NCBI GenBank assembly: GCA_002269645.1
Contig: NIVC01004563.1
Coordinates: 1-41,910 of the forward strand
Direction of reading: 5' to 3'
From: Macrostomum lignano
Taxonomy: Eukaryota
DNA: 41,910 bases
The translations under genes and the position numbers were made by a program. Shown in pieces: positions 16,900-30,908 of the stretch. A model generated the notes under the pieces. The model ran no database searches, was not told the DNA's origin, and was given only the letters and a program-made list of their open reading frames with translations. Position 1 is the stretch's first letter. Every line of letters starts with the position of its first letter.

Positions 16900-17643
16900 G
16901 CTTCTGTTTGGCTTCCTCATTCCCACTTGGATTCTGTCGATGTGGATCTCCAACACCGCCACGGTGGCCATGATGCTCCCCATAGCGGAGGCCGTGCTGG
17001 TGGAGCTGCGCAAGCACTACCAAGCCGCGCATTCCAGGCACTCTCACCAGCGCCGTCATAGCAACGCTTTAGACGTTGAAACGGCAGCCAAAATGTCAGA
17101 GGGGCGCCGAGATTTCGAGGGGGGTGCCGTGGAGACTGGCGCAGTGAATCCCGCCTTCGAAATGTCGGCCGCTTCGTCGAGCAGCGACCAGACAACGGTC
17201 GCGTCTGGAATCGGCAATCACGATGCTGGCTGTGGCGACAAAGACTTCGCACCAGAGAGCGACGTCGAGGGACAGACAGCTAAAGAGTTGGACGACGACG
17301 AAATCGTTGCCGAAGATCGGCACGTGGATGCGGAGATTGATTCGGCGCACGACGTCGACATGCGCGTGCCCATGAAAGAGTTCATTGCCGACAAGCGCAA
17401 CGCCGAGTTTGCCAACATCTGCCGCATGCTGATGCTCTCCGTGTCCTACGGCGCCGTGTTCGGCGGGGTCGCCACCCTGACCGGCACGGCTCCTAACGTA
17501 ATCTTGAACGGCATCGTGGCCGAATACTTCGGCTCGGAGACGTCGCTAAACTACAGCAGCTGGTTGTTCTATGGTCTGCCGCTGGCCGTTGTAACTCTGC
17601 TCATCGCTTGGGTTTGGCTGCAGATCAGCTTTTTGGGGTTCAG
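16900..17643 (+). CDS. SLC13A: SLC13 transporter exon 4 (first SNT motif, long acidic loop, GGVATLTGTAPN)
   Basis: GGCAG|G CTT: LLFGFLIPTWILSMWISNTATVAMMLPIAEAV...YGAVFGGVATLTGTAPNVIL...WVWLQISFLGF; donor AG|GT at 17644. Confidence 0.95.
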
Positions 17644-17898
17644 GTTCGTGTTTATTCTGCTTTAGCTAGCAATGATTGAGCATTGATTAGTCAGTCATGC
17701 GAGAGTATGCAGGGGTAACCCTGTGTGGCAAAGCCCACACTTGCACATGATTTACAGCAGCCCTGACATGCGCACTTTTAGTCCTGTAAAACAATAAAAC
17801 CACGTCGCTCTGTCTATACTTCACAATCATAAATATCGGTACGTACTTGTTCATGCCCCATGGACTAACTAGCTACAACTCTTCAAACACTCATCCAG

Positions 17899-17991
17899 GA
17901 GCTTTGTGCGACCGAACACCTTGCCAAAAAGTGACGAGGAGCGAATCAAGGCGACACTGCGCAGGGAGTATCAGAAACTCGGGCCTATCTC
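17899..17991 (+). CDS. SLC13A: SLC13 transporter exon 5
   Basis: CATCCAG| (R)SFVRPNTLPKSDEERIKATLRREYQKLGPIS |GTGAGT; phase 2-2 fits neighbours; CTAAC branch site ~30 nt upstream. Confidence 0.85.
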
Positions 17992-18078
17992 GTGAGTAAA
18001 GTATCATCAAGTCGATGCTTAATTCGATCTGGTAGTGAACCCCAATAACCTCATGTCGAACTATAAACCTCGTGACAG

Positions 18079-18502
18079 GTACGCTGAAGTGAACGTCATT
18101 CTGCTCTTTGTGCTTACCATCTGTCTCTGGATCAGCCGGGAGCCCGGAGTTCGCGGCTGGTCGGCCCTTTTCCTCGGCCCGGACCCTAAAAACACGAGCA
18201 ACACCATGTCCTTCACTAGCGACGCTCAGCCAGTCATCCTATCGGCCATACTTCTCTTCTTCCTGCCGTCCAAGAATCCCTTTAGCTGCTGCACCTGCAA
18301 GTGCCCACAGCGCTGTGGCAAATCGTCCAGTCGTAGACGGAGACGCACCTATTCCCGCGAAGTCACGGTTGAGCCGAACCTGATTGTGCAGATTGACGAC
18401 CGACCGGACAGGATGATGACCTGGCGGTTGATGCAGGAACGAGTAGCCTGGAACATTGTGCTCATGCTGGGCGCTGGATTCGCTCTGGCTGACACTTCAA
18501 GG
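18079..18502 (+). CDS. SLC13A: SLC13 transporter exon 6
   Basis: GACAG| YAEVNVILLF...LWISREPG...WNIVLMLGAGFALADTSR |GTTGGT. Confidence 0.92.
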
Positions 18503-18552
18503 GTTGGTTGGTTTCTGCAGCACAAGTGCTGTAGTATTCAGTGACGTTCATC

Positions 18553-18600
18553 CAAGGACCACTAGAAGTTACCGTTAACGGTAACTTCTAGTGGTCCTTG
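18553..18600. mobile_element. Minimal 48-bp perfectly palindromic non-autonomous DNA transposon (hAT-like) with 8-bp TSD
   Basis: CAAGGACCACTAGAAGTTACCGTT|AACGGTAACTTCTAGTGGTCCTTG flanked by CGTTCATC at 18545-18552 and 18601-18608. Confidence 0.85.
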
Positions 18601-18685
18601 CGTTCATCATCAGACATCCTTGCTAATAATAATATAACTCATCACCTGAGTTTCTTTCTTACTGACTTGATATATTCATTCACAG

Positions 18686-18847
18686 GTGTCGGGTTTGTCA
18701 GACTGGATTGGTCAGCAACTGTTGCACCTGAAAGTTGTACCTTTGGAGGCTCTGATCTTCATCTTCTGCCTGTTCTCCGCTCTGCTGACGGAGTGGACTT
18801 CAAACGGCACGGCCGCAACTATATTGCTGCCTATCTTGGCCAGCTTT
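18686..18847 (+). CDS. SLC13A: SLC13 transporter exon 7 (second SN motif)
   Basis: CACAG| VSGLSDWIGQQL...LLTEWTSNGTAATILLPILASF |GTAAGT. Confidence 0.95.
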
Positions 18848-19007
18848 GTAAGTACATTGTGTACATCCGCACATGTACTTATCGGTTGTAGTATGAGTTC
18901 AATAGTGAACAGGTGTCCTAGAATATGGAATATGGCGCCGAAATCCTAACCCTACATGCATGTAAGCTTGTCTGTGTAAATATCTGTATATGCTCGCTTA
19001 ATTGCAG

Positions 19008-19145
19008 AGCCAAAACATCGGCGTGCACCCGTTCTACCTGATGCTTTCGTCCACCGCTTCGTGCTCATTCGCCTTCATTCTGCCGATTTCTACGCCGGCA
19101 AATATTCTGGTGTTCTCCAGGGGCTACCTGAGGGCCGTGGATATG
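19008..19145 (+). CDS. SLC13A: SLC13 transporter exon 8
   Basis: TTGCAG| SQNIGVHPFYLMLSSTASCSFAFILPISTPANILVFSRGYLRAVDM |GTAAGC. Confidence 0.93.
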
Positions 19146-19418
19146 GTAAGCCTAGCTAGCTATTGCCTACAATGACAATATGGCCAAATTACTTAAACAC
19201 CTCGTACTGCAGCAAAGAAAACGTAATCAGTGAAGCAACAAAGGACAACAAGTCCCATCTAGCTAGTCACGGTGTATTAATAAGTTGTTATTACCGAAAC
19301 TGTCTCTGCAGTTGTCGTGCTAAATGACCTACAAATGTACAAGACTTTGATTCAGAGACCAATAGGGGTTGTTAACTGTGTTTCAATTTCAAGAAAATTA
19401 AACAATTCTATATTCTAG

Positions 19419-19559
19419 TTGAGAACCGGCGTCGTCATGTGGCTGCTTAGCAACTCCTTGGTTGCCGTGGCAACGATTAGCTACGCTCCGGCCATCTTCG
19501 GACTCCGTGAACTGCCACCTTGGGCGGTGAGAAATGTCACCGCGTCGGCTACCGCTTAA
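19419..19559 (+). CDS. SLC13A: SLC13 transporter exon 9 (terminal)
   Basis: TTCTAG| LRTGVVMWLL...IFGLRELPPWAVRNVTASATA TAA; typical F..P.WA C-terminus. Confidence 0.93.
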   Translation: MRTGVVMWLLSNSLVAVATISYAPAIFGLRELPPWAVRNVTASATA

Positions 19560-20916
19560 TTAAAAAAAATTGAGTTTGTTGTCACAGCTGTCCCAGCAGC
19601 AGCGAGTCTGCTGCGATCTTTATACTTTAAATGAAACTCATTTAAAAGCTACCGATATACCATCATCCTGCTCGAGTGAGGTATTTCAAGCCTTATAAGC
19701 ATAGGTGATGAACAACACTGTCTCTAAGTCTGAATAACCGAATCTTTGATTTTATCATCTCTGATAATTGCATGCTGATCTCATGGTCTCACTTGACTAA
19801 ACTATTTGCCATTATTAGGCAAAGAAAACACATTTACATGTATATGAAGCCAGTTTTTTATCATTTGAGTTTCGGGCGTAACAGTTCAAACAAAAATCTT
19901 TTTATCGAGGCCTGAGAATTCAACTGACGTTGTTTTTATACTTTTGACAAGTAAAACCTTTTTTTTCAAAAATTAGGGAATGTCTTTTGAAAAGGCGAAT
20001 TATACGCGTGATTACTTTCTCTAAAAATTATATAGTGCCTTGTGCCTTATTAATTTGTGCCTTAAGTTATAGCTAAATGCATTAACTTGTACTAAATTAA
20101 TAGAGCACGTGCACTGTTTAGTCAGTAAATTTATTTACCCTTACATATAGTAGCTGTTACCTGTTAGTTTTTATATACAAGCTTTCAATCCCACCTTTGT
20201 GGTTTTGTTTTACTTATATTTGTAGATATGAACGTAATTACTACCCTCAACTTAAGTAAAATTCGATCAAATACGTCTGTCAATTAATGTGAATTGTTGT
20301 AAATTCTATTTAATTAATTTAATTCTATTTAATTGTTGTAAATTGTTGTAACTACTGATAGTAGCAAATAACCATTTTTTATGAATGGTTATTTGCTACT
20401 AGCAGTAGTATAATAACCAATAGCTGACGGAAGTTCGAACTTTTTATTTAAAACTTTTTGATTACAAAAATAATAAAAGTATAGCAACAATATACACGAG
20501 CAGATATAGATTTGAAGACCATAAAAATTTCCGATTTTAATATTAGGTAGCTAGATGTACTTCAAGTAAACATATAAGTATAACATCAATGTAAAAAGTT
20601 GATTTATTCAGAATCAACTCGAATCTATCGAATCTAAAAACTTCTTTTACTGCATGAGAACAGCATGAAAGAAAAATACATTAACTACATTATTGTAAAT
20701 ATATAGCCGCTATAGTCAGAATACCCGCCTACTGTGATAGATAAAGTACATGTTTCGTTTCATTAGACACAGTTTATAAGAGAAGCATATATAACCACAG
20801 CAAAGTAAAAATAGGAAAGAGAAACTTTTTAAATGAACTACATTTTTAAAGGTTTCTAAAAAAAAAAAACACTAAATTGTAGGTTTTGTGCTCCCTGAAA
20901 ACTCGAGCGATCGGAA

Positions 20917-21315
20917 TCACTGAATCAGCATTTCAAATTCCATCAGTGAATAATAAAATCCAAAGTTATATTGCCATACAATTCCCACAGCTTAATCTGC
21001 CGCGTTTGGATTTGTCGCATGGCAAGCTTGGTACCACCAACAACCCTTGAATAGAGCACTGCAACTGCCGCCAGCATTCGCGTCCAAATCGAACGTGCTG
21101 AACATCATCCCATTGCTCATTGCCATCATGCTGTCTCCCACAGTCGGGTCGCTGGTGCGAAATCCAGATATGTTCAGCCGAAACTTATCAGCCTCTTTGG
21201 CAACGGAGAAGCTGGAGTTAGTCAACTCGGTACACCGTACCGTTCCACAGCCGCATCCGAATGCGAAGAGCTCGACCAGACAGCCATGAGGTGAGAGAGT
21301 GCATGGTGCGCAGGC
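20917..21315 (-). pseudogene. Fibrinogen-related domain (FReD) pseudogene, terminal exon
   Basis: TTGCAG|GC LRTMHSLTSWLSGRALRIRMRLWNGTVYRVD(Y) +1 nt frameshift at 21218/9, SSFSVAKEADKFRL...GDSM...NGMMFSTFD...CSALFKGCWWYQACHATNPNAAD*AVGIVWQYNFGFYYSLMEFEMLIQ*; in-frame TAA at 20994-20992. Confidence 0.88.
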
Positions 21316-22016
21316 CTGCAAAAATCGATTTAGGTCATTTGTCCTGTACATCAACGAACCATCGTACATGTAATTCCGTATTTTAGATTGTTGCATGACG
21401 ATCTTTATAACTTCGAGGGTTCAGAAAACCAGTAGCTACTGTAATATAGCAATAACTATATATTAGTAGCGCAATCCACCAAGAACTAAATTTATTTAGT
21501 CCAGACAAGGATTTCACCGCCCCAGACGTATAAGTCGTAAAAAAATAGCTCTTGAAAGGTGTCAGAGTTAGGCATAACCAACAATAATCGAATAATTTCC
21601 TAATCTCTTTACGTATTGTTTGCGTGTGTTGGCCCCCCAACATTTCGTATGATAGTTGAACAATCGATAATTTAGGCCCGCCCGATCGCCTCGGTTTACA
21701 TGTACTTCTTTAACAACTTTCACGACCGTTAAAAAACTTTCACTGTCCGCCTGTTGCTACGTTTGCTACGATAAACCGTAAATTTAGCTTCAAGTGTTAG
21801 TTCATTCTGAGTTAACTTGTCCCACCAGCAATTGGACAAGTAACGGATAATATACATGTCACATCAGAAATGTGTTTGTTACACTAACACTGCATCAGAT
21901 TAAGCCTACCTGCAATAATGTATAAAATTACTTATTGACTACATCCTGAGACCAACATAATTAACGAACTATATGTTTAAAAACTTTTACATGCATCATG
22001 CAAGCTCGTACACAAC

Positions 22017-22156
22017 CAGCCAGTGGTTTTCATCTGCCCTTCTCCGAATCCGGCCGCGTACATATGTACTCGCTCCAGTTGCGATGGAAATACGTCAAGT
22101 TGTCAACCCGGCGCTGAATTCTGATCCAACAATCGCTAAACGAGCTCACAAACACC
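22017..22156 (-). pseudogene. FReD pseudogene, upstream exon (5' boundary uncertain)
   Basis: CWIRIQRRVDNLTYFHRNWSEY [8-bp insertion] AAGFGEG [1-nt frameshift] DENHWL(G): the IQRR..F.RNW..Y..GFG...HWLG FReD motif; donor appears to lack one G needed for phase 1. Confidence 0.82.
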
Positions 22157-22216
22157 TGACGCGCATTTCAGATTGGCAAAATTTCATTTTCAATCGAGAG
22201 TCACATATTACAATTA

Positions 22217-22403
22217 GCTCGAAAAGTCACATCGTCGAAAACTGATTTAGAAGCCTGTGATTTAGGCTTAATGACAAGCTCGAAAAGTCATAAGCTCGAA
22301 AAGGGTTAGAGTTAGGGCTTGTGCCTCATAAGGTTAGGGTTTAGGCTTATAAGATAGGGTTAGGGTTGGGGCCTTTAGGGTTAGGATTTAGGGTTAGTAG
22401 GGT
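22217..22403 (+). repeat. Repeat remnant with AGCTCGAAAAG motifs and interstitial TTAGGG-like hexamers
   Basis: AGCTCGAAAAG three times (22217-22302); exact TTAGGG at 22312, 22334, 22360, 22375, 22388 plus variants; CAAGCTCGAAAAG recurs near 31357. Confidence 0.65.
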
Positions 22404-24430
22404 ACTATACAGAGCTTGTGCCTTTTCGATTAATTCTTATTCTTTCACTTCTGTATGCATATCATTAAATTTTTTTTACATGTCGCTACTATAGTACCCG
22501 AAGTAGAAGAATCAGGATGAAATGTTTCATTTCTTAGCTGAATATTTTGAAAGTTTCGAGTAGTACCGTAGGAAATCATAACTCACAAGCTATTAAAGTT
22601 GATTTAGTGCCAATGAAAAGATCGAGTTCTAATAGAACAGAGAGAGACAACAAACAGAACTTTGCTGTTTTTCTTTGTTTATTTGTGAATGTTTTTCTTT
22701 GCTGATTTCTTTGTTTTTTTCGCTTTGTTTGCTAAAATTTAAAAGCCATGCTTTCCTCGAATGTATACATTGGCTAGCTAAGCCAAACCAAACAAACAAC
22801 CATATTAAGTTGACTATGCAGAGTTGTCATCAACGGACTGTGCGCACTGATGAACTATAATTAATTTGACTCTAATCTTATTGGGCATACATAATTCTAC
22901 AGCAATATCTATTCACTTTTACAACTTTCACAGCTAATGTGGTAACTGCCATGTGCATGTGCGATGTGCCATGTTTTTATGATGATGTTTGCATCGCTTG
23001 TTTACTACTGCTTATATCAAGCACTTCATAAATTTTTCATAATTATTTGCATTGTTTGTATCAGCGTTTAAGCTTTGGAATTTATTTCTATTAAAGTACT
23101 TTTGTCATTTTAAGCTATAATAATCTATTTGCAATTATTTAAGTGCAAAAGAGTATCTTTACAGTGCCAATGGCTTTAAGGAAGTGGACAGAAATGCAAA
23201 GCCAAATTTCGGGAAGAATGGAACTTTCACGAGCATTTTAAAAAAACCTTATTACATATAATTTTCTTTAACTTTAGCTATAAAGATAGATAGATACCGA
23301 CAGACCATTTTTAGTATTTAGCTATAATTATAGAAAAAGACTTTTCGCTGAATTTGCCTAGATTGTTGCTGGATTTGCTTTTGCCGATATTGTCCATGGT
23401 GAATTTCTGTTGCCAAATTTGTGAGCATCCATAGACATAGACATAGATAAGTGTTTGTGTCTCAAAGACTAGTTTTGGCCAAAAAGCAAACAAATAAATG
23501 TAGGCCTATGCAAGGAAATAAATATTGATAAACAGTTATAAACCTTTTATTAATTAGAAAGGTAAATCTAATTAGGCTTCTTTCTTTTATATTTTTCCTA
23601 AAATAGAATAGTAACTTGAATTACTTGAGATAAGTCATCTTATATAGTATATATACACTTTCTAGCTGTATTATTGATAATAAGTTCATTATTTATCAAT
23701 TATTTAAAATCTATATTTATCTGTTCACTGTTGCTGTTATTATTCTTCTTTTTTATATTCTAAAAAATATCAAATTAATATGGGGCCCTTATTATAATTA
23801 ATGGTAAATGTTTCTAAATAGAATATATTTTTTTAAATCAATATCAATTGCTTATTTAATTTTGTCATACAAAAGGATGTACCCATTTTTGGAGATTTGA
23901 AAATAGATCCTAAAATAATACTAAAGATATAAAGTCATATCTTATTTTCAATTTTTATTCTAGTAAAAAACTATTTACCTAGCTTTATATGAGTAGGCCC
24001 TATATATACATGTATTGAAAATTTAGGTCATTGGTACTGATACAATAAACAACTTAGTAAGCAAGAATCTTTCAAATTTTCATGAGAATATTAAAATTAT
24101 AAAAAATTTATAAAAAATTATAAATTATAAAAAGTTATAAAAAATTAATCAAATTTATTGGTATTGCAATGAGTAACTTACTAGATAGATAACAAAATTA
24201 AAATATGCTTTTTAAGTAAGAATTGTTATTTAGCCTATAACATAAGTTTGAAACTTGCAATAAACTAGAAGCATATAGCCCAAGTAATTGAAGACTCTAA
24301 GTAGCCTACTGCTAGTAGTTCAATGCTATTAGAAATGTAATAAGCATAAATTTGCTAAAATTTTTGTTCATATTTTATTTTTTTATATTACAATAATATT
24401 AAAAATCAAAGTACATTGTATGCACTTTAG

Positions 24431-24791
24431 CCAACAATCCGCTGGCTTTTTCGCACGTCGGCCTGGCTGCCAAGCAAAGACGATTGGCGCCTCTGCCTCA
24501 GCTGCGTGTCGGCCGAGGAGCGTCGGCATGTCGAGCAGTTCCTGCACCGACGCGACAGCAAAGCTGCTCTCGCCAGCCGCCTGCTGGCCCGGCGTTTCGG
24601 CACCTCGGCCACTGGGCTGGACAATTCGCAGCTGACCGCCTGCCTGCAGCGCAGCGACAAGGGGCGCCCGTTTCTGGCTGGCTTTGAGGCCGACTTCAAC
24701 ATCAGCCACCAGGGCGACGTGCTCATTCTGTGCGGTGTCTGCGGGCCAGGGCTCCGTGTTGGCTGCGATGTGATGAAGGCCACCCTGCCCA
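24431..24791 (+). CDS. AASDHPPT: 4'-phosphopantetheinyl transferase (Sfp-type, AASDHPPT), first coding exon; no genomic start codon
   Basis: CACTTTAG| PTIRWLFRTSAWLPSKDDWRLCLSCVSAEERRHVEQFLHRRDSKAALASRLL...GRPFL...FNISHQGD...VGCDVMKATLP; donor CCC A|GTGCGT. The frame is closed upstream by the acceptor TAG (24428-24430). Confidence 0.9.
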
Positions 24792-24831
24792 GTGCGTAAT
24801 TCTTTATTAGAAATCTCAACGATTTTGGGGT

Positions 24832-24965
24832 GGGGGGCAGAGCAACTGACTGAGCGGTAAACGCGTCCTACTCTTAGGCCACCCCTGGAGCCCACAAGCC
24901 AGAGAAAGTGTACATGCCAGACGATTCAAAAGTCAGGGACGCTGTACACCCTGTGTGAACGGCTC
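24832..24965 (-). repeat. Dispersed repeat family B, copy 3 (AASDHPPT intron 1)
   Basis: Reverse complement reads TTCACACAGGGTGTACAGCGTCCCTGACTTTTGAATCGTCTGGCATGTACACTT. Confidence 0.65.
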
Positions 24966-24980
24966 TATGAGTGCGTGACA

Positions 24981-25497
24981 AGCTTCAAAATCCCAAACTT
25001 CACAATCCCCCAAGCTTCACAATCCCCAAGCTTCACAATCCCCAAGCTTCAAAATCTCCAAGCTCCACAATCTCCAATCTTCAAAATCTCCAAGCTTCAA
25101 AATCTCCAAGCTTCACATTCTCCAAGCTTCACAATCCCCAAGCTTCAAAATCTCCAAGCTTCACAATCTCCAAGCTTCACAATCCCCCAAGCTTCACAAT
25201 CTCCAAGCTTCACAATCCGCAAGCTTCACAATCCCCCAAGCTTCACAATCTCCAAGCTTCACAATCTCCAAGCTTCACAATCTCCAAGCTTCACAATCCC
25301 AAACTTCAAAATCCCCAATCTTTAAAATCTCCAAGCTTCACAATCCCCCAAGCTTCACAATCTCCAAGCTTCACAATCCGCAAGCTTCACAATCCCCCAA
25401 GCTTCACAATCTCCAAGCTTCACAATCTCCAAGCTTCACAATCTCCAAGCTTCACAATCCCAAACTTCAAAATCCCCAATCTTTAAAATCTCCAATC
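24981..25497. repeat. ~15-16-bp minisatellite CCAAGCTTCACAATCT in AASDHPPT intron 1
   Basis: Direct reading. Confidence 0.95.
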
Positions 25498-25596
25498 TAC
25501 GCAACTTTAACCCACATTCTGCTCCTCATTCAACTACTCGTAGTAGGCAAGTCAAGCGCATTTTTAATCTAATATTTTCCAATCCGAAATCAACAG

Positions 25597-25721
25597 GAGG
25601 CGAATCGTCTGCCGAGTCGTTCTTCCGCATCATGCGCCGTCAGCTGACTGAGGATGAGTGGCGCTTCGTCAGGTCGCATGGCGGGGACTCTCAGCAGCTG
25701 GCTGCGTTCTACAGGATCTGG
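25597..25721 (+). CDS. AASDHPPT: AASDHPPT exon 2
   Basis: CAACAG|GA: (R)GESSAESFFRIMRRQLTEDEWRFVRSHGGDSQQLAAFYRIW |GTGAGT. Confidence 0.95.
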
Positions 25722-25831
25722 GTGAGTGCGGATGCGCCATGAGAGCTGTGTAGCGAGTTCTTTTGTAGGAGCGAAATCTTCCCTGAAATCATTGGTAACC
25801 TTGTGTCACCTATTTTTATTAATAGTGCCAG

Positions 25832-26215
25832 CCCCTGACACCATAATTAGTGCAATTTCTGACACCCTAATAAGTGCACCTCTGACACCCTAGTTCGTGC
25901 ATCTCCTGACACCCTAATTAGTGCCAACCCCTTACACCCTAATTAGAGCATCTCCTGACACCCTAATTAGAGCACCTCCTGACACCTAATTAGTGCATCT
26001 CCTGACACCTAATTAGTGCACCTCCTGACACCCTAATTAGTGCCAACCACTGACACCCTAATTAGAGCAACTCCTGACACCCTAATTAGAGCAACTCCTG
26101 ACACCCTAATTAGTGCACCTCCTGACACCCTAATTAGAGCATCTCCTGACACCTAATTAGTGCATCTCCTGACACCCTAATTAGTGCATCTCCTGACACT
26201 CTAATTAGTGCACCC
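25832..26215. repeat. ~24-bp minisatellite CCTGACACCCTAATTAGTGCATCT in AASDHPPT intron 2
   Basis: Direct reading, about 16 copies. Confidence 0.95.
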
Positions 26216-26252
26216 CGTGACAATTTCTGCAGTTTCTAATGCTTGTCCGCAG

Positions 26253-26624
26253 TGTCTCAAAGAGTCGGTCGTGAAGGCCACAGGCGATGGGATCGGGTTC
26301 AGCCTGTCCCGCCTGAACTGCCAGCCCGACCCCGACTTCCTGTTCGACGCCGCAGACCTTCCTCTCACGACCTCGCGATCCATCGTGTACATTGACGGTT
26401 CGGCGAGCTCTGATTGGTTGTTCGAGGAGCACCGGCTGCCTCTGGGTCACGTGGCCGCCGTGGCCTGGCAGCGCCGCGGTGGCGGGGCAGGCAGTCACGT
26501 GACTTTAGAAGCATTCACAGAACTGGCGCCTCTGTCCAGCTCAATATGCGATGGTCTGCAGCCAATCACTGTTTCCCACGATTCCGAAATGAGCTATCAA
26601 AACTTTTGCAATAAACCTGCTTAG
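26253..26624 (+). CDS. AASDHPPT: AASDHPPT exon 3 (terminal)
   Basis: CCGCAG| [15 protein letters not shown]...[17 protein letters not shown]...FCNKPA TAG; completes the FYR.W.LKES..KA.G.G PPTase motif. Confidence 0.95.
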
Positions 26625-26815
26625 TGCTACTTATAGTAGGTTTACAGGCTTGAACTGTAGAACCCGCATTTTTATAGACAAAACAAATAAATGTAAATTA
26701 GTTTTAATTGACGTACTGAGCTTTAAATATCAGATTTCTTTAAGTTTGTTGCATCATCATTTTGTTAGAGGACGAAGAGGAAGAAGAAGAGGACTAAACA
26801 CACAGACAGGACGTG

Positions 26816-27267
<452 letters not shown>

Positions 27268-28334
27268 CCAGCTCGTATATTTTGTCCCGCCAATAAAAAG
27301 TGCAATAAAAGCCGGTCTCCAGCAAAATCTGGATCAATTCTGTATTTCTCTACTAAAAGCGAACCGACTGATAATTTTGCTTTCAAGCATTTTGCTATAT
27401 TTAAATTGAGTATCAGTCTATTCATGCAGCAAATTTTTTTAATTTTCTAAATATAACTGAGTAAGAAACTTTCAAAGAACTTGTGCTTTTGTAAAAATCG
27501 GATTTTTTTTGCTAGAATTTGTCCACTGAAAAACCCTATTAATCAGCGCTATTCGATCTGGTTGAGAGAACACGTAAATGCACTAGCAATACGACAAATA
27601 TACGTTCCCCGTTACCGGCATGGGGTCATTTCTAAGAACCCGTTTCTTCGCTACAATTGATTTGTGAACTGTGTGAATTAATATACATGTAAGAGATATT
27701 TAAGTGGTTAACAAAGTTTTTTTAAATGGCTACTTACATGTACATGTACATGTAATACAACAACTTTTGAATGTAAAAAAATTTAAAAAAATAAAATAAT
27801 AATATAATAATATGTATAATCATAATATAAAAAATTAAAAATCAAAAAGAATGCAAAAGAATGCATGTGATAGTATATACCTTGTCTATCCGATTATTGA
27901 ATGCTTGCAAGCACGTTTGCTAAAAAGTTTTTATCTGTTTCCAATTTTTATTTTATTTGTTTGATTATTTGTTTATATATTTAATCATAATTAGCTTATT
28001 GATTCAACCTGAGTACCATGCTGTACACGTAGTAATTACTGTTGCTATTTTGTTTCTTCTTTGCCAACTTTATATTTTATTGGTATTCCAAGAAACGCTA
28101 GTAGGGCAAAATAAGGGATGCGCGCCTGCAACGTTCTGCAGCTTCAGCCTCCCTAGAGACAGCAGTCGCGCTCTTGTTTTCCTATTGCACCAAGCAAGCA
28201 TAAGCGTATAATAAAAGTACTTTTGCACTTGACCGCGATTCAACCAGCGAATATTTAAACTAATACGATTTCATAATTAAAATGTTGCAGGCAGGCAGGC
28301 ATCTCGAAGATGAACATTTTTCTAAAGCCAAACT

Positions 28335-28578
28335 TCACAAAACTTGCTGCGGCAGCTGCTGTTGGTTCTCTTTCCGCTTCTGATTTGACTGGTAGCGCCT
28401 CAGCAGGCAGAGTTCGAGCAGCTCCACCGCCACCGCGCAGGTGAGGCCGAGAAACAGGCTGGACAGACCGCCAATTTGACTCATCAAGGCGCTTAATCCC
28501 AGCGACAGGATCTCCGTCTTTTGCACCGTGTTTCTCGACTGCCGACGGATCGTGACGTAGGCAAAGTTGGTGTCGTCT
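28335..28578 (-). CDS. DEG/ENaC (amiloride-sensitive) channel, exon 3 (TM2)
   Basis: CCTCAG|A DDTNFAYVTIRRQSRNTVQKTEILSLGLSALMSQIGGLSSLFLGLTCAVAVELLEL...QQVL TGA; CTAAC branch site ~29 nt upstream; IGG...LFLG...ELLE TM2 signature. Confidence 0.85.
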
Positions 28579-28724
28579 CTGAGGAATGTCCGAATTGGGA
28601 GCTGGTGTTAGCGAGGCTGCATTGCAGAGGGAGGGGGGTGGGGCACTCCAGCACATCAAAGGCGACCAGCAGTCAGGCCCATTACGCTGATCCCTGAGCA
28701 CTCGCATGGATAAGTACCCAGGCA

Positions 28725-28770
28725 CTCGCTTACACAGGGTGTCTCTAGCAGCCCTGACTTTCTGATCCTT
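28725..28770 (+). repeat. Dispersed repeat family B, copy 4 (ENaC intron 2)
   Basis: TTACACAGGGTGTCTCTAGCAGCCCTGACTTTCTGATC. Confidence 0.5.
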
Positions 28771-28984
28771 CCCGCAGTGTTAAACATGGGGGCATGAAAG
28801 GGGACAAGACGTCTATCTAGACGTTAATTTTACATTGCATCGACGTTTAGCCGACGTATGACGTCATTTTCCGTCGATGTAATGTAAAAGTAAAAGTACA
28901 GCCGAAGTCGCTGGCATCAAATCGATGTACGCTGTACGGGAAAGGATCTGCATGTAAAACAGCCCTCTCAGTACCAGTTGTTAC

Positions 28985-29868
28985 TTGCACCCAACTATAG
29001 CCAAAGCAGCCTCTAACTTAGGCATCACTTGGTCCAGAGTCTGTTGTTTCTCCTCCGCCGATTCGTCAAAGCCATTCGTGCCACCGTCTGCCGACGCCGC
29101 CTTGGTGATGTTCGCAGTCTCGAAGAACGTCTTCATGGTTACGCTGGCCTGCTCCAGTTTTTCTCTCAATCGGCGCTCTTCGTCTGGCGGCAGGCCGCCC
29201 ATCTCCAGCCGCTTGCTGGCCTCGTCAAGATCGCGGAAGCAGCGCGAGTGCTGCATCAGCCAGTGCAGCTGCCATTGAGTTGCCCGCCAGACAGTCTTTG
29301 AGGCCACCGTGTCAAAGTAGTGAAAGTGACAGGGCATCAGGCACACGCTTCTGCTAAGGCGCTCCCGCTCGGAGTCCAAGTTGAGCCGATTCAGGCAGTC
29401 AATGTTGGCCAGCATCTTTCGCATGCCGATGCGGGTGTCTCCGCAGTACGGATGGCTGCCGTTTGGCACCGAGGAGCGCAGGTATTTGACGTAGTGACAG
29501 CCGCAGCGTTCCAACGCCAGCTTGCCAAGCTCCTGCCTCAGGCAGGCCTCGTACGAGTAGGCAAACTCTTCGTCCAGGTCGCGAATTTTTCGCTGACTCG
29601 CCGCCTCGGCAGACATGCAGGCGTCGGCTGGGCTGTCGACCTCGGCCCAGCGCTCCGTCTTGTAGCTGATCTCGACTAATTTACCCGGCTCCACGTGGAT
29701 GCCCTTCAGAGTCGGCTCCGGGTAAGTGTCGTTCTCGTGCACCTCTAGCCGAATGCCGTCGGCCTGTTCGAAGATGTCCTGCACAAAGGCCTCCTCGTAC
29801 TCGTTTGGCACCGCGCTGGAGACGCGGAGCACCAGAGTCAGCCAGTCGATGTCTCGCGGAGCTTGCAC
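28985..29868 (-). CDS. DEG/ENaC channel, exon 2 (palm and Cys-rich thumb)
   Basis: GIRLEVHENDTYP...GIHVEPG...YSYEACLRQ...CGCHY...PYC...C...CLMPCHFHYFDTVASKTVW; phase-0 acceptor AAG|GTG at 29868; phase-2 donor AA|GTAAC at 28985 (alternative GG|GT at 28991). Confidence 0.85.
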
Positions 29869-30326
29869 CTTTGAGTAGGTTGTATGGAGTTGCCTGTGAG
29901 AAACTCGGTTTACCCTCTTTTTTGGTACTTTTAAGGTACTTTCACTGACTTCCTAGTGCAACCTACTCAACGAACTGAAAGATCCACCGAATTCTCTGAT
30001 TGGCAGAGCAAAAAAAGTTTTAAAAGATCTTGACCCTAGTTTTAAAAAGTGCATCCGGTAATTTCACTTATAGCTTTAGTCCAGCTAAGAAATGCCGTCC
30101 ATTGTAAAACAGGCAAACTTTTTGTTTTCTATAATGTATGCAAATGCCTCCACTCCAGGTCATTCGGTGTACAAAAGTCTAGCTAGGCGCCCAGATGTTA
30201 ATTTATTACATGCACACGGGCGGTCTGTAATTCAGTTCCCGCCGTTCGCTCCCTCCAGGTGAATTTACGACCTCATGCCACAGGTGTGTAACAGCCACAT
30301 GTATAGGCGATCTGCAATCAAACTAC

Positions 30327-30908
30327 CTGATAGCAGTTGAAGTAAGACGGCAGGCTGACTCGCTTCAACAGCAGGCTGCAGTCTTTCCAATTGCTGATCT
30401 CGACGAACGGCCCGACACCCGTGACGCAGAAGATGAACAACTGCGGCACAGAGAAGCTGAGATTAACGGCATCGTTGTGCTCTAGCGACTGGTAATAGAC
30501 TTTCTTGGTGTCGCTCGCCAGTACGTTCTCCGCCATCAAGAACTCGCTCGAATTAAACAGCTGAAACGCTGTGCGACGCAGTTCGTGCGAGAAATTCGTT
30601 GGCGAGAGAACCCGTCCGCTGCTCCACAGAGTCGCCGCCGTCTTCGAGAAGGGATAGTGACTGCAGATGGTCACAGCCGGTATCGCAATGGTGGGGTCGT
30701 TCAGGACGATAGTGGTCTGGATGATGGTCTTGTACTGCAGGTAGTCCTTGGCGATGAAGCACACGCAGGCAATGAGGGCGGCCGCCATCAGGCAGAGGTA
30801 GCCAGCCCAGATCGCCCGCAGATGTCGAGTTGGCGCCTTGACCAGCCGACCGGCTCCGCGCAGCGAAGTGCTGCTGCAGAACTGCTGGAAAACTTCGTGG
30901 AAAGTCAT
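30327..30908 (-). CDS. DEG/ENaC channel, exon 1 (N-terminus, TM1)
   Basis: GCC ATG TFHEVFQQFCSSTSLRG...IW...DYLQY...IPAVTICS...YFNCYQ|GTAGTT; FC..TS.xG, TM1 and PAVT.C motifs. Confidence 0.9.

What the first reader, a model, noticed from the sequence alone, without database searches (positions are those of the whole stretch)
24420..24445. Housekeeping PPTase with no start codon of its own: the spliced-leader AUG would supply it in frame
The conserved AASDHPPT N-terminus (IRWLF...W.PS) begins 6 nt after a 3' acceptor TTTAG (24426-24430) preceded by ~1.5 kb of AT-rich, outron-like DNA. The acceptor TAG is itself an in-frame stop, no in-frame ATG precedes the conserved block, and the nearest ATG (24420) is out of frame. 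Flatworm spliced leaders end in a conserved AUG that can act as initiator Met for recipient mRNAs (established in schistosomes). SL-AUG + CCA ACA ATC CGC TGG gives MPTIRW..., a complete 286-aa enzyme. The gene would then be obligately dependent on trans-splicing for translation (inference).
Basis: partly seen in the sequence, partly recalled or inferred. Interest (0 to 1): 0.75.

Follow-up and report, generated by a model that had tools for sequence, protein, structure and literature searches.

The report
Flatworm PPTase gene lacking its own ATG
In the flatworm Macrostomum lignano, the gene for the housekeeping enzyme AASDHPPT has no start codon of its own and most likely borrows the AUG at the end of the trans-spliced leader, a mechanism already proven in schistosomes, so this is a new example of a known trick and not a new mechanism.

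Summary
The window is the whole Macrostomum lignano contig NIVC01004563.1. A three-exon AASDHPPT gene (24431-24791, 25597-25721, 26253-26624) starts straight after TTTAG. TAG 24428-24430 is an in-frame stop, ATG 24420 is out of frame, and the first in-frame Met is codon 114.

The published M. lignano spliced leader ends in ...TTATTGCATG. Joined at 24431 it gives MPTIRWLF..., 286 aa.

Both proposed refuters were tested.
- **Assembly indel:** a truly diverged second copy (L002) is identical across the junction. A third copy (L001) carries a homopolymer deletion, probably an assembly error, that still does not put the ATG in frame.
- **Upstream cis exon:** none is modelled. All three GenBank CDSs are 5'-partial and begin 0-18 nt after the acceptor. 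The UniRef-listed models start at the internal Met.

Other support:
- Orthologue N-termini most often have the same length as MPTIRWLF (MGSVRWAF type).
- The exons are about ten times more conserved than the flanking DNA.
- A trematode-like orthologue's mRNA carries a spliced leader.

No read spanning the leader-exon junction could be examined, so trans-splicing at 24431 remains inferred (confidence about 0.75). Leader-AUG initiation is established in Schistosoma, so this is a new member of a known kind. It matters mainly for annotation.

The parts
22400..24430 (+). AT-rich upstream DNA, the presumed outron. Its 5' limit and the promoter are unknown.
   Evidence: GC is 0.15-0.34. It holds no annotated gene. 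Window and L002 differ by 3.45% here, plus indels.
24420..24422 (+). Nearest upstream ATG. It is out of frame and opens an overlapping 71-codon ORF, 24420-24635.
   Evidence: It sits 11 nt before codon 1. It would be removed with the outron if trans-splicing occurs at 24430/24431.
24426..24430 (+). 3' splice acceptor TTTAG, the proposed leader trans-splice site. TAG 24428-24430 doubles as an in-frame stop.
   Evidence: The GC jump falls at 24431. The CDS of copy L001 starts at 973, with the AG at 969-970. It partly matches the published trans-splice acceptor motif [T/C]TNCAG, with TAG in place of CAG.
24431..24791 (+). Exon 1, with no ATG of its own. It encodes PTIRWLF...DVMKATLP, the AASDHPPT_N domain. 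It ends in phase 1 at donor GTGCGT.
24792..25596 (+). Intron 1, holding a 16-nt minisatellite at 24979-25495.
25597..25721 (+). Exon 2, the start of the ACPS domain.
   Evidence: The acceptor is CAG and the donor GTGAGT.
25722..26252 (+). Intron 2, holding a 24-nt minisatellite at 25834-26222.
26253..26624 (+). Exon 3, carrying the [10 protein letters not shown] catalytic motif and ending in stop TAG 26622-26624.
   Evidence: The GenBank CDS also ends at 26624.

Best explanation
This is a live copy of the Macrostomum lignano AASDHPPT gene, which encodes a Sfp-type 4'-phosphopantetheinyl transferase. Its first coding exon begins exactly at a 3' splice acceptor (24430/24431) and contains no initiator codon.

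The proposed mechanism is as follows. The pre-mRNA's AT-rich 5' part (the outron) is removed by spliced-leader trans-splicing. The 35-nt leader, which ends in ...UUAUUGCAUG, is joined to CCAACAAUCCGC. The leader's terminal AUG then sits in frame and serves as the initiator, giving MPTIRWLF... (286 aa).

Without the leader no full-length enzyme can be made. The in-frame TAG blocks any upstream start. The first AUG inside the exon (24527) is out of frame. The first in-frame Met (codon 114) would drop the whole N-terminal domain.

**Shown here:** the sequence anatomy, the frame, the identical junction in a second diverged copy, the gene's integrity and constraint, the species' leader sequence (from the literature), and the absence of a modelled upstream exon.

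**Inferred:** that trans-splicing occurs at 24431 and that ribosomes start on the leader AUG.
For: 1. **Species and leader.** The gene is M. lignano BOX15_Mlig031350g1. The leader ends in ATG (PMC8629364). A Macrostomum genome paper calls that ATG a translation start codon (PMC10468722).
2. **Frame.** ATG joined to CCA at 24431 reads through 285 codons to the stop.
3. **Independent copy.** L002 is diverged, yet identical across 24351-24504.
4. **Constraint.** Exons differ at 3 of 858 sites, against 34 of 986 upstream and 35 of 1334 in introns. The exons carry no indels.
5. **Gene models.** All three GenBank models are 5'-partial, with CDSs starting 0, 15 and 18 nt after the AG. The pipeline behind them called ORFs with TransDecoder on RNA-seq-guided transcripts after trimming the leader (PMC5730564). 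On my reading, a 5'-partial ORF means the transcript model stops at the exon's start. One model starts within 2 nt of the AG.
6. **Protein completeness.** The alignment to human AASDHPPT (PDB 2CG5 and 2BYD) starts at residue 2. Among 33 full-length orthologues, the F of the RWxF motif lies at position 6-19, most often 8 (9 of 33, for example MGSVRWAF). MPTIRWLF also puts it at 8. Only a Met is missing.
7. **Orthologue.** A trematode-like orthologue's mRNA contig (L007) begins with 22 nt that match the 3' end of the opisthorchiid leader at 21 of 22 positions, so this gene receives a leader elsewhere in flatworms.
8. **Mechanism.** The leader AUG is in frame in 28% of Schistosoma mansoni trans-spliced transcripts, and more than 40 cDNAs need it to start in the right frame (Cheng et al. 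2006, as summarised in PMC9851317).
Against: - No read or cDNA showing the leader-exon junction could be inspected. The protein collection holds no transcript-derived M. lignano version of this protein.
- Two of the three GenBank models start 15-18 nt inside exon 1 and not at the AG. For those copies the pipeline evidently did not place the 5' end at a trans-splice site.
- The acceptor is TAG with a weak pyrimidine tract, not the favoured YTNCAG.
- Only about 30-39% of M. lignano genes are trans-spliced.
- Other flatworm orthologues carry their own ATG: MIRWVF in Cichlidogyrus and MIRKAF in Paragonimus. Leader dependence is therefore not ancestral for this gene.
- Copy L001 as assembled would be out of frame with the leader AUG.
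Confidence: 0.75

Rival explanations
1. The acceptor at 24430 is used in cis. An unannotated upstream exon ends in ATG, or in ATG plus a few codons, and supplies the start.
For: Sequence alone cannot exclude it. There are 73 ATG...phase-0 GT candidates in 19560-24430, including ATG|GT sites such as ATGGTAAAT near 23800. Introns directly after a start codon occur in other genes (general knowledge).
Against: The candidate count is at chance: 62 +/- 14.5 in shuffles. Those with the species' GTRAG donor number 1, against 1.65 expected. No upstream GC-rich block lies within 2 kb. None of the three RNA-seq-guided GenBank models has an upstream exon, and neither do the UniRef-listed models. Orthologue N-termini show that no residue other than Met is missing.
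Confidence: 0.1
2. An assembly error hides a genomic start. One missing base between 24420 and 24431, for example GCC for GCCC, would give MHFSPTIRW....
For: The assembly does contain homopolymer indels. L001 differs from the window by roughly ten single-base deletions in 3.2 kb, one of them at 24439.
Against: Three separately assembled contigs all read ATGCACTTTAGCCAACAAT across 24420-24438. L002 is a genuinely different copy and agrees exactly. L001's deletion lies downstream and yields the third frame, not the ATG's. MHFSPTIRW would also be a less typical N-terminus.
Confidence: 0.04
3. The mRNA 5' end at about 24431 is a transcription start or an uncharacterised end, and translation starts at a near-cognate codon (ACG codon 9 or CUG codon 13) or at Met 114. 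Alternatively, the copy is not translated into a full enzyme at all.
For: There is no direct proof of the leader. Near-cognate codons exist early in exon 1. The UniRef-listed models use Met 114.
Against: Such starts would delete the conserved IRWLF...W.PS block or the whole AASDHPPT_N domain. Sfp-type enzymes need that domain (general knowledge of the family). The first AUG in such an mRNA (24527) is out of frame. The tenfold lower divergence across the whole of exon 1, with no frame-breaking changes in two copies, argues for a translated full-length product.
Confidence: 0.1

Closest known systems
Schistosoma mansoni mRNAs that take their initiator Met from the spliced leader's 3'-terminal AUG (Cheng, Cohen, Ndegwa and Davis, J Biol Chem 2006)
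   Same: It is a flatworm leader ending in ...UUGCAUG. The acceptor is placed so that the AUG is in frame with a conserved ORF that has no upstream AUG of its own. The protein is complete only after trans-splicing.
   Different: This is a different, free-living and early-branching flatworm (Macrostomorpha) and a different gene. Here neither the junction nor translation from the AUG has been demonstrated. In S. mansoni it was tested experimentally (as summarised in PMC9851317).
Human AASDHPPT (PDB 2BYD, 2C43, 2CG5), a Sfp-type phosphopantetheinyl transferase
   Same: It has the same two-domain architecture (AASDHPPT_N plus ACPS). The E-value is 4.5e-46 over residues 2-242. The motifs FNISHQGD, VGxDxMK and WxLKESxxKA are kept.
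   Different: The human gene encodes its own AUGs. The M. lignano C-terminal tail is unrelated.
Flatworm orthologues with their own start codon: Cichlidogyrus casuarinus KAL3315101.1, Paragonimus heterotremus PPTase, and a trematode-like transcript in SRR13259298
   Same: They are the same enzyme. The start lies directly before the I-R-[WK] block (MIRWVF, MIRKAF, MKVIRKAF). The trematode-like transcript carries a spliced leader.
   Different: Their ATG is genome-encoded. In the trematode-like transcript the leader is joined about 250 nt upstream, where its AUG opens only a 6-codon upstream ORF.
slORFs, open reading frames created by leader addition in nematodes, Oikopleura and trypanosomes (slORFfinder, PMC9851317)
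   Same: The start codon is contributed by the trans-spliced leader.
   Different: Those mostly use near-cognate NUG codons and often create alternative ORFs. Here a canonical AUG would start the gene's only functional ORF.

Membership tests
Flatworm mRNAs initiated on the spliced-leader AUG | The organism has a spliced leader whose last three bases are AUG | tested here: met
   The window is M. lignano. The published leader is CGGTCTCTTACTGCGAAGACTCAATTTATTGCATG (PMC8629364).
Flatworm mRNAs initiated on the spliced-leader AUG | The leader AUG is in frame with the main conserved ORF, with no stop in between | tested here: met
   ATG joined at 24431 reads 286 codons to TAG 26622-26624.
Flatworm mRNAs initiated on the spliced-leader AUG | No genome-encoded in-frame AUG can give the complete protein | tested here: met
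   TAG 24428-24430 is in frame directly upstream. ATG 24420 is out of frame. The first in-frame Met is codon 114. The same holds in copy L002.
Flatworm mRNAs initiated on the spliced-leader AUG | The leader is actually joined at that acceptor in mature mRNA | not testable with these tools
   No M. lignano reads or transcripts were reachable. The support is indirect only: 5'-partial models start 0-18 nt after the AG in three copies, and a trematode-like orthologue carries a leader.
Flatworm mRNAs initiated on the spliced-leader AUG | Translation starts on the leader AUG | not testable with these tools
   This needs N-terminal proteomics, ribosome profiling or a reporter.
AASDHPPT / Sfp-type (type II) 4'-phosphopantetheinyl transferase | Two-domain architecture, AASDHPPT_N plus ACPS, above the Pfam cut-offs | tested here: met
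   PF22624 scores 75.8 bits (cut-off 27) and PF01648 scores 62.4 bits (cut-off 25).
AASDHPPT / Sfp-type (type II) 4'-phosphopantetheinyl transferase | Conserved motifs that I take, from general knowledge of the family, to be the active-site ones | tested here: met
   FNISHQGD, VGCDVMK and [10 protein letters not shown] align to the human FNISHQGD, VGIDIMK and WALKESFIKA in 2CG5 and 2BYD.
AASDHPPT / Sfp-type (type II) 4'-phosphopantetheinyl transferase | Transfers phosphopantetheine from CoA to carrier proteins | not testable with these tools
   This needs an enzymatic assay.

The most novel reading that the evidence does not exclude
M. lignano may have a sizeable class of conserved, essential genes that have lost their own start codon and can be translated only after leader addition. 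Trans-splicing would then act as an obligatory gate on their expression. These genes would sit in GenBank as unexplained 'partial' proteins. This PPTase would be the first identified case, with the loss having occurred after the split from neodermatan flatworms, whose orthologues keep an ATG.
Probability: 0.4. Interest if true: 0.5.

Novelty: new member of a known kind. Interest (0 to 1): 0.35.

Why it matters
**Annotation.** The M. lignano pipeline trimmed the leader before calling ORFs. As a result this enzyme appears in GenBank three times as a 'partial' protein and in UniRef as a 171-aa stump that lacks a whole domain. Adding the leader's ATG back at trans-splice sites would repair this model, and probably many others.

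**Biology.** It would show that leader-AUG initiation, proven in schistosomes, also serves a single-purpose essential enzyme in an early-branching free-living flatworm. By general knowledge of the enzyme, AASDHPPT activates fatty-acid synthase and the mitochondrial acyl carrier protein. The dependence would have arisen within the lineage, because a monogenean and two trematode or trematode-like orthologues have their own ATG.

**Testability.** M. lignano is the one flatworm with stable transgenesis, so the gene offers a direct in vivo test of leader-AUG initiation.

Tried and rejected
- **Transcript evidence.** I looked for it in the protein collection and its cluster members. Only GenBank and UniRef M. 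lignano entries exist, with no RNA-derived ones.
- **Per-gene trans-splicing flags.** I searched the supplements of three M. lignano papers for Mlig031350, Mlig013812, Mlig020684 and AASDHPPT. There were no occurrences, or no files were held.
- **Leader RNA gene in the window.** There is no exact match to TTATTGCATGGT, and the 2-mismatch hits are at chance level.
- **Operon reading.** The upstream same-strand SLC13 gene ends at 19559, 4.9 kb away. That is far beyond the published 1-kb repeat-adjusted operon threshold. A Fibrinogen_C fragment lies between the two genes on the other strand. Operon membership is therefore unsupported, but it was not excluded.
- **Closest non-Macrostomum hits.** P0002 and P0003, the closest hits of the first search (37-40% identity), are distant orthologues with ordinary ATG starts. 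They say nothing about the leader.
- **Pseudogene reading.** I rejected it because the exons are intact and strongly conserved in two diverged copies.

Full report
**What is in the sequence.** The window reads tgt ATG CAC TTT AG|C CAA CAA TCC GCT GG around 24417-24445. ATG is at 24420-24422 and TTTAG at 24426-24430. The coding frame is CCA ACA ATC CGC TGG from 24431. TAG 24428-24430 is in that frame and directly precedes CCA. The ATG lies 11 nt upstream, so it is out of frame, and it opens a 71-codon overlapping ORF. Three hundred nucleotides upstream in the gene's frame are full of stops. GC content is 0.15-0.34 from about 22400 to 24430 and rises to 0.56-0.69 in the next windows, so an exon boundary at 24431 is clear.

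I built the gene model by hand and checked it by translation. Exon 1 is 24431-24791 (donor GTGCGT, phase 1). Exon 2 is 25597-25721 (acceptor CAG, donor GTGAGT). Exon 3 is 26253-26624 (acceptor CAG, stop TAG). That makes 858 nt, or 285 codons without a Met. Pfam finds AASDHPPT_N (residues 11-102) and ACPS, both well above their cut-offs. Human AASDHPPT structures align from residue 2 to 242 at E = 4.5e-46, with FNISHQGD, VGxDxMK and WxLKESxxKA conserved.

**Where it comes from.** The protein is 100% identical to GenBank PAA47131.1, 'hypothetical protein BOX15_Mlig031350g1, partial [Macrostomum lignano]'. The window is the whole contig NIVC01004563.1 of assembly GCA_002269645.1. [quoted passage not shown] Its published 35-nt spliced leader is CGGTCTCTTACTGCGAAGACTCAATTTATTGCATG, about 30-39% of its genes are trans-spliced, and the enriched trans-splice acceptor motif is [T/C]TNCAG (PMC8629364; PMC5730564). 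Joining ...GCATG to CCAACA gives ATG CCA ACA ATC CGC TGG, which reads MPTIRW, in frame.

**Refuter 1, assembly indel.** The protein's 90% cluster holds two more GenBank entries from other contigs, and both are also 'partial'. I fetched both loci and aligned all three.

L002 (NIVC01004766.1) is a truly different copy. Against the window it has 34 substitutions in 986 aligned upstream sites (3.45%), 35 in 1334 intron sites, and many indels. It has only 3 substitutions in 858 exon sites and no exon indel. It is identical to the window from 24351 to 24504, which includes ATGCACTTTAGCCAACAATCCGCTGG.

L001 (NIVC01003527.1) lies at a contig end. It is the window's sequence with roughly ten single-base deletions, nearly all of them in homopolymer runs, over 3.2 kb. 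One of them is a C at 24439. This looks like uncorrected long-read error. It puts ATG 24420 into the third frame, not the gene's frame.

Three contigs agree on the bases between the ATG and the acceptor. An indel that hides a genomic start is therefore unlikely.

**Refuter 2, an upstream cis exon.** The GenBank models come from a pipeline that trimmed the leader, assembled transcripts on the genome, cut them at trans-splice and poly(A) signals, and called ORFs with TransDecoder (PMC5730564). As I understand TransDecoder, a 5'-partial ORF means the ORF reaches the 5' end of the transcript model.

The three CDSs begin at L001 973 (AG at 969-970), window 24446 and L002 6001. Those are 0-2, 13-15 and 16-18 nt after the acceptor once the codon offset is allowed for. 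So no model in any copy extends upstream of the acceptor or carries an upstream exon, and one model starts at the acceptor itself. The UniRef-listed models start at the internal Met 114 (171 aa), or are a chimaera starting there, so they found no upstream start either.

I also scanned 19560-24430 for ATG...GT mini-exons that would splice in phase. There are 73, against 62 +/- 14.5 in shuffled sequence. One has the species' GTRAG donor, against 1.65 expected. This does not exclude a tiny exon, but nothing points to one.

**Is anything other than Met missing?** An exhaustive HMMER search gave 59 relatives at E <= 1e-30. In the 33 full-length sequences I read, the F of the RWxF motif lies at position 6-19. 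Position 8 is the most frequent, in 9 of 33 (MGSVRWAF, MNGLRWAF, MASVRWAF, MSRIRWVF, MGELRWVF and others). The shortest are MIRWVF and MIRWAF. MPTIRWLF puts F at 8. The Pfam domain and the human alignment are complete at the N-terminus. The protein therefore lacks one residue, the initiator.

**Other flatworms.**
- The monogenean Cichlidogyrus casuarinus has an intronless orthologue with its own ATG...gttttgttATGATTCGATGG, reading MIRWVF.
- Paragonimus heterotremus has ...gacaaATGATCCGG, reading MIRKAF.
- A Logan RNA contig (SRR13259298, organism not stated) encodes MKVIRKAF from its own ATG at 273. The protein is a 275-aa relative of the Paragonimus one. The contig begins CTGCCGTGTATAGTAGTGCATG, which matches the 3' end of the Opisthorchis felineus leader (…CTGCCGTGTRWATTAGTGCATG) at 21 of 22 positions. 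It also closely resembles the Fasciola leader (PMC12582326, supplementary file 17).

So this gene's mRNA receives a leader in a trematode-like species, but far upstream of its own start. The M. lignano arrangement, with the acceptor moved to the codon after the start and no ATG of its own, looks derived.

**Mechanism and its status.** The outron is removed, the leader is joined at 24431, and its AUG starts translation.

The alternatives give no working enzyme. An unspliced RNA has the in-frame TAG and many upstream AUGs. An mRNA that starts at 24431 without a leader has its first AUG at 24527, out of frame. Met 114 removes the N-terminal domain. The tenfold lower divergence of the exons in two copies shows the full ORF is under selection.

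The mechanism has an experimental precedent. [quoted passage not shown] 2006, as summarised in PMC9851317). All reported flatworm leaders end in ATG (PMC12582326).

Two things are not shown here: the junction itself and the use of the AUG. Weak points are the TAG acceptor (not CAG) with a poor pyrimidine tract, and the two gene models whose 5' ends are ragged and do not sit at the AG. I put the explanation at about 0.75.

**Novelty and interest.** The mechanism is known, and the Macrostomum literature already treats the leader's ATG as a start codon. In the papers I searched I found no account of genes in this species that depend on it, and this gene is filed as 'partial' or truncated in the GenBank and UniRef entries I saw. 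It is a new member of a known kind. It is useful for repairing annotation, and it is a clean candidate for an in vivo test in the one flatworm with stable transgenesis. It would not surprise a specialist.

Noticed in passing
L001 1-3240, compared with window 23457-26700: The contig-end copy NIVC01003527.1 is the same sequence as the window, apart from roughly ten single-base homopolymer deletions. One of them falls in the PPTase coding sequence (window 24439). This looks like unpolished long-read error at a contig end, and it produced a wrong GenBank protein N-terminus (NNRWLF...).
   Followed up: partly
window 20992-21396, minus strand: An ORF fragment matches Pfam Fibrinogen_C (E = 6e-14, profile positions 110-185 of 221). 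It lies in the unannotated 4.9-kb gap between the SLC13 gene and the PPTase gene. It may be an unannotated gene or a pseudogene fragment on the opposite strand.
   Followed up: partly
window 24979-25495 and 25834-26222: Both PPTase introns are largely filled by minisatellites: a 16-nt unit CAAGCTTCACAATCTC with about 32 copies, and a 24-nt unit CCTGACACCCTAATTAGTGCATCT with about 16 copies. Copy number differs between the window and L002, with indel blocks of 192, 81 and 16 nt.
   Followed up: partly
window 26828-27266: A (TGTC)n microsatellite of about 110 copies lies just after the PPTase 3' end. A 119-aa GenBank gene model with no Pfam hit (27091-27450) overlaps its 3' part and is probably spurious.
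   Followed up: no
protein P0011 (667 aa): This M. lignano-derived model starts at the PPTase internal Met (MKATLPRG...). After residue 134 or so it runs into unrelated low-complexity sequence. It looks like a chimaeric or read-through prediction, possibly through the reverse strand of the neighbouring ASC channel gene.
   Followed up: no
L007 1-300 (Logan SRR13259298): A trematode-like PPTase transcript carries a partial spliced leader. It then has a 250-nt 5' UTR with several upstream AUGs. The leader's own AUG opens a 6-codon upstream ORF (ATG TTG CTA GAT TTC AAA TGA).
   Followed up: partly
window 16940-19559 (+) and 28335-30908 (-): The neighbours are an SLC13-type Na+/sulfate-carboxylate symporter (754 aa, same strand, upstream) and an amiloride-sensitive channel (ASC, 558 aa, opposite strand). 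The channel gene has an ordinary genome-encoded ATG (MTFHEVF...). The same order, symporter then PPTase then channel, is seen in L002. L001 shows PPTase then channel, and its contig begins less than 1 kb upstream of the PPTase.
   Followed up: partly
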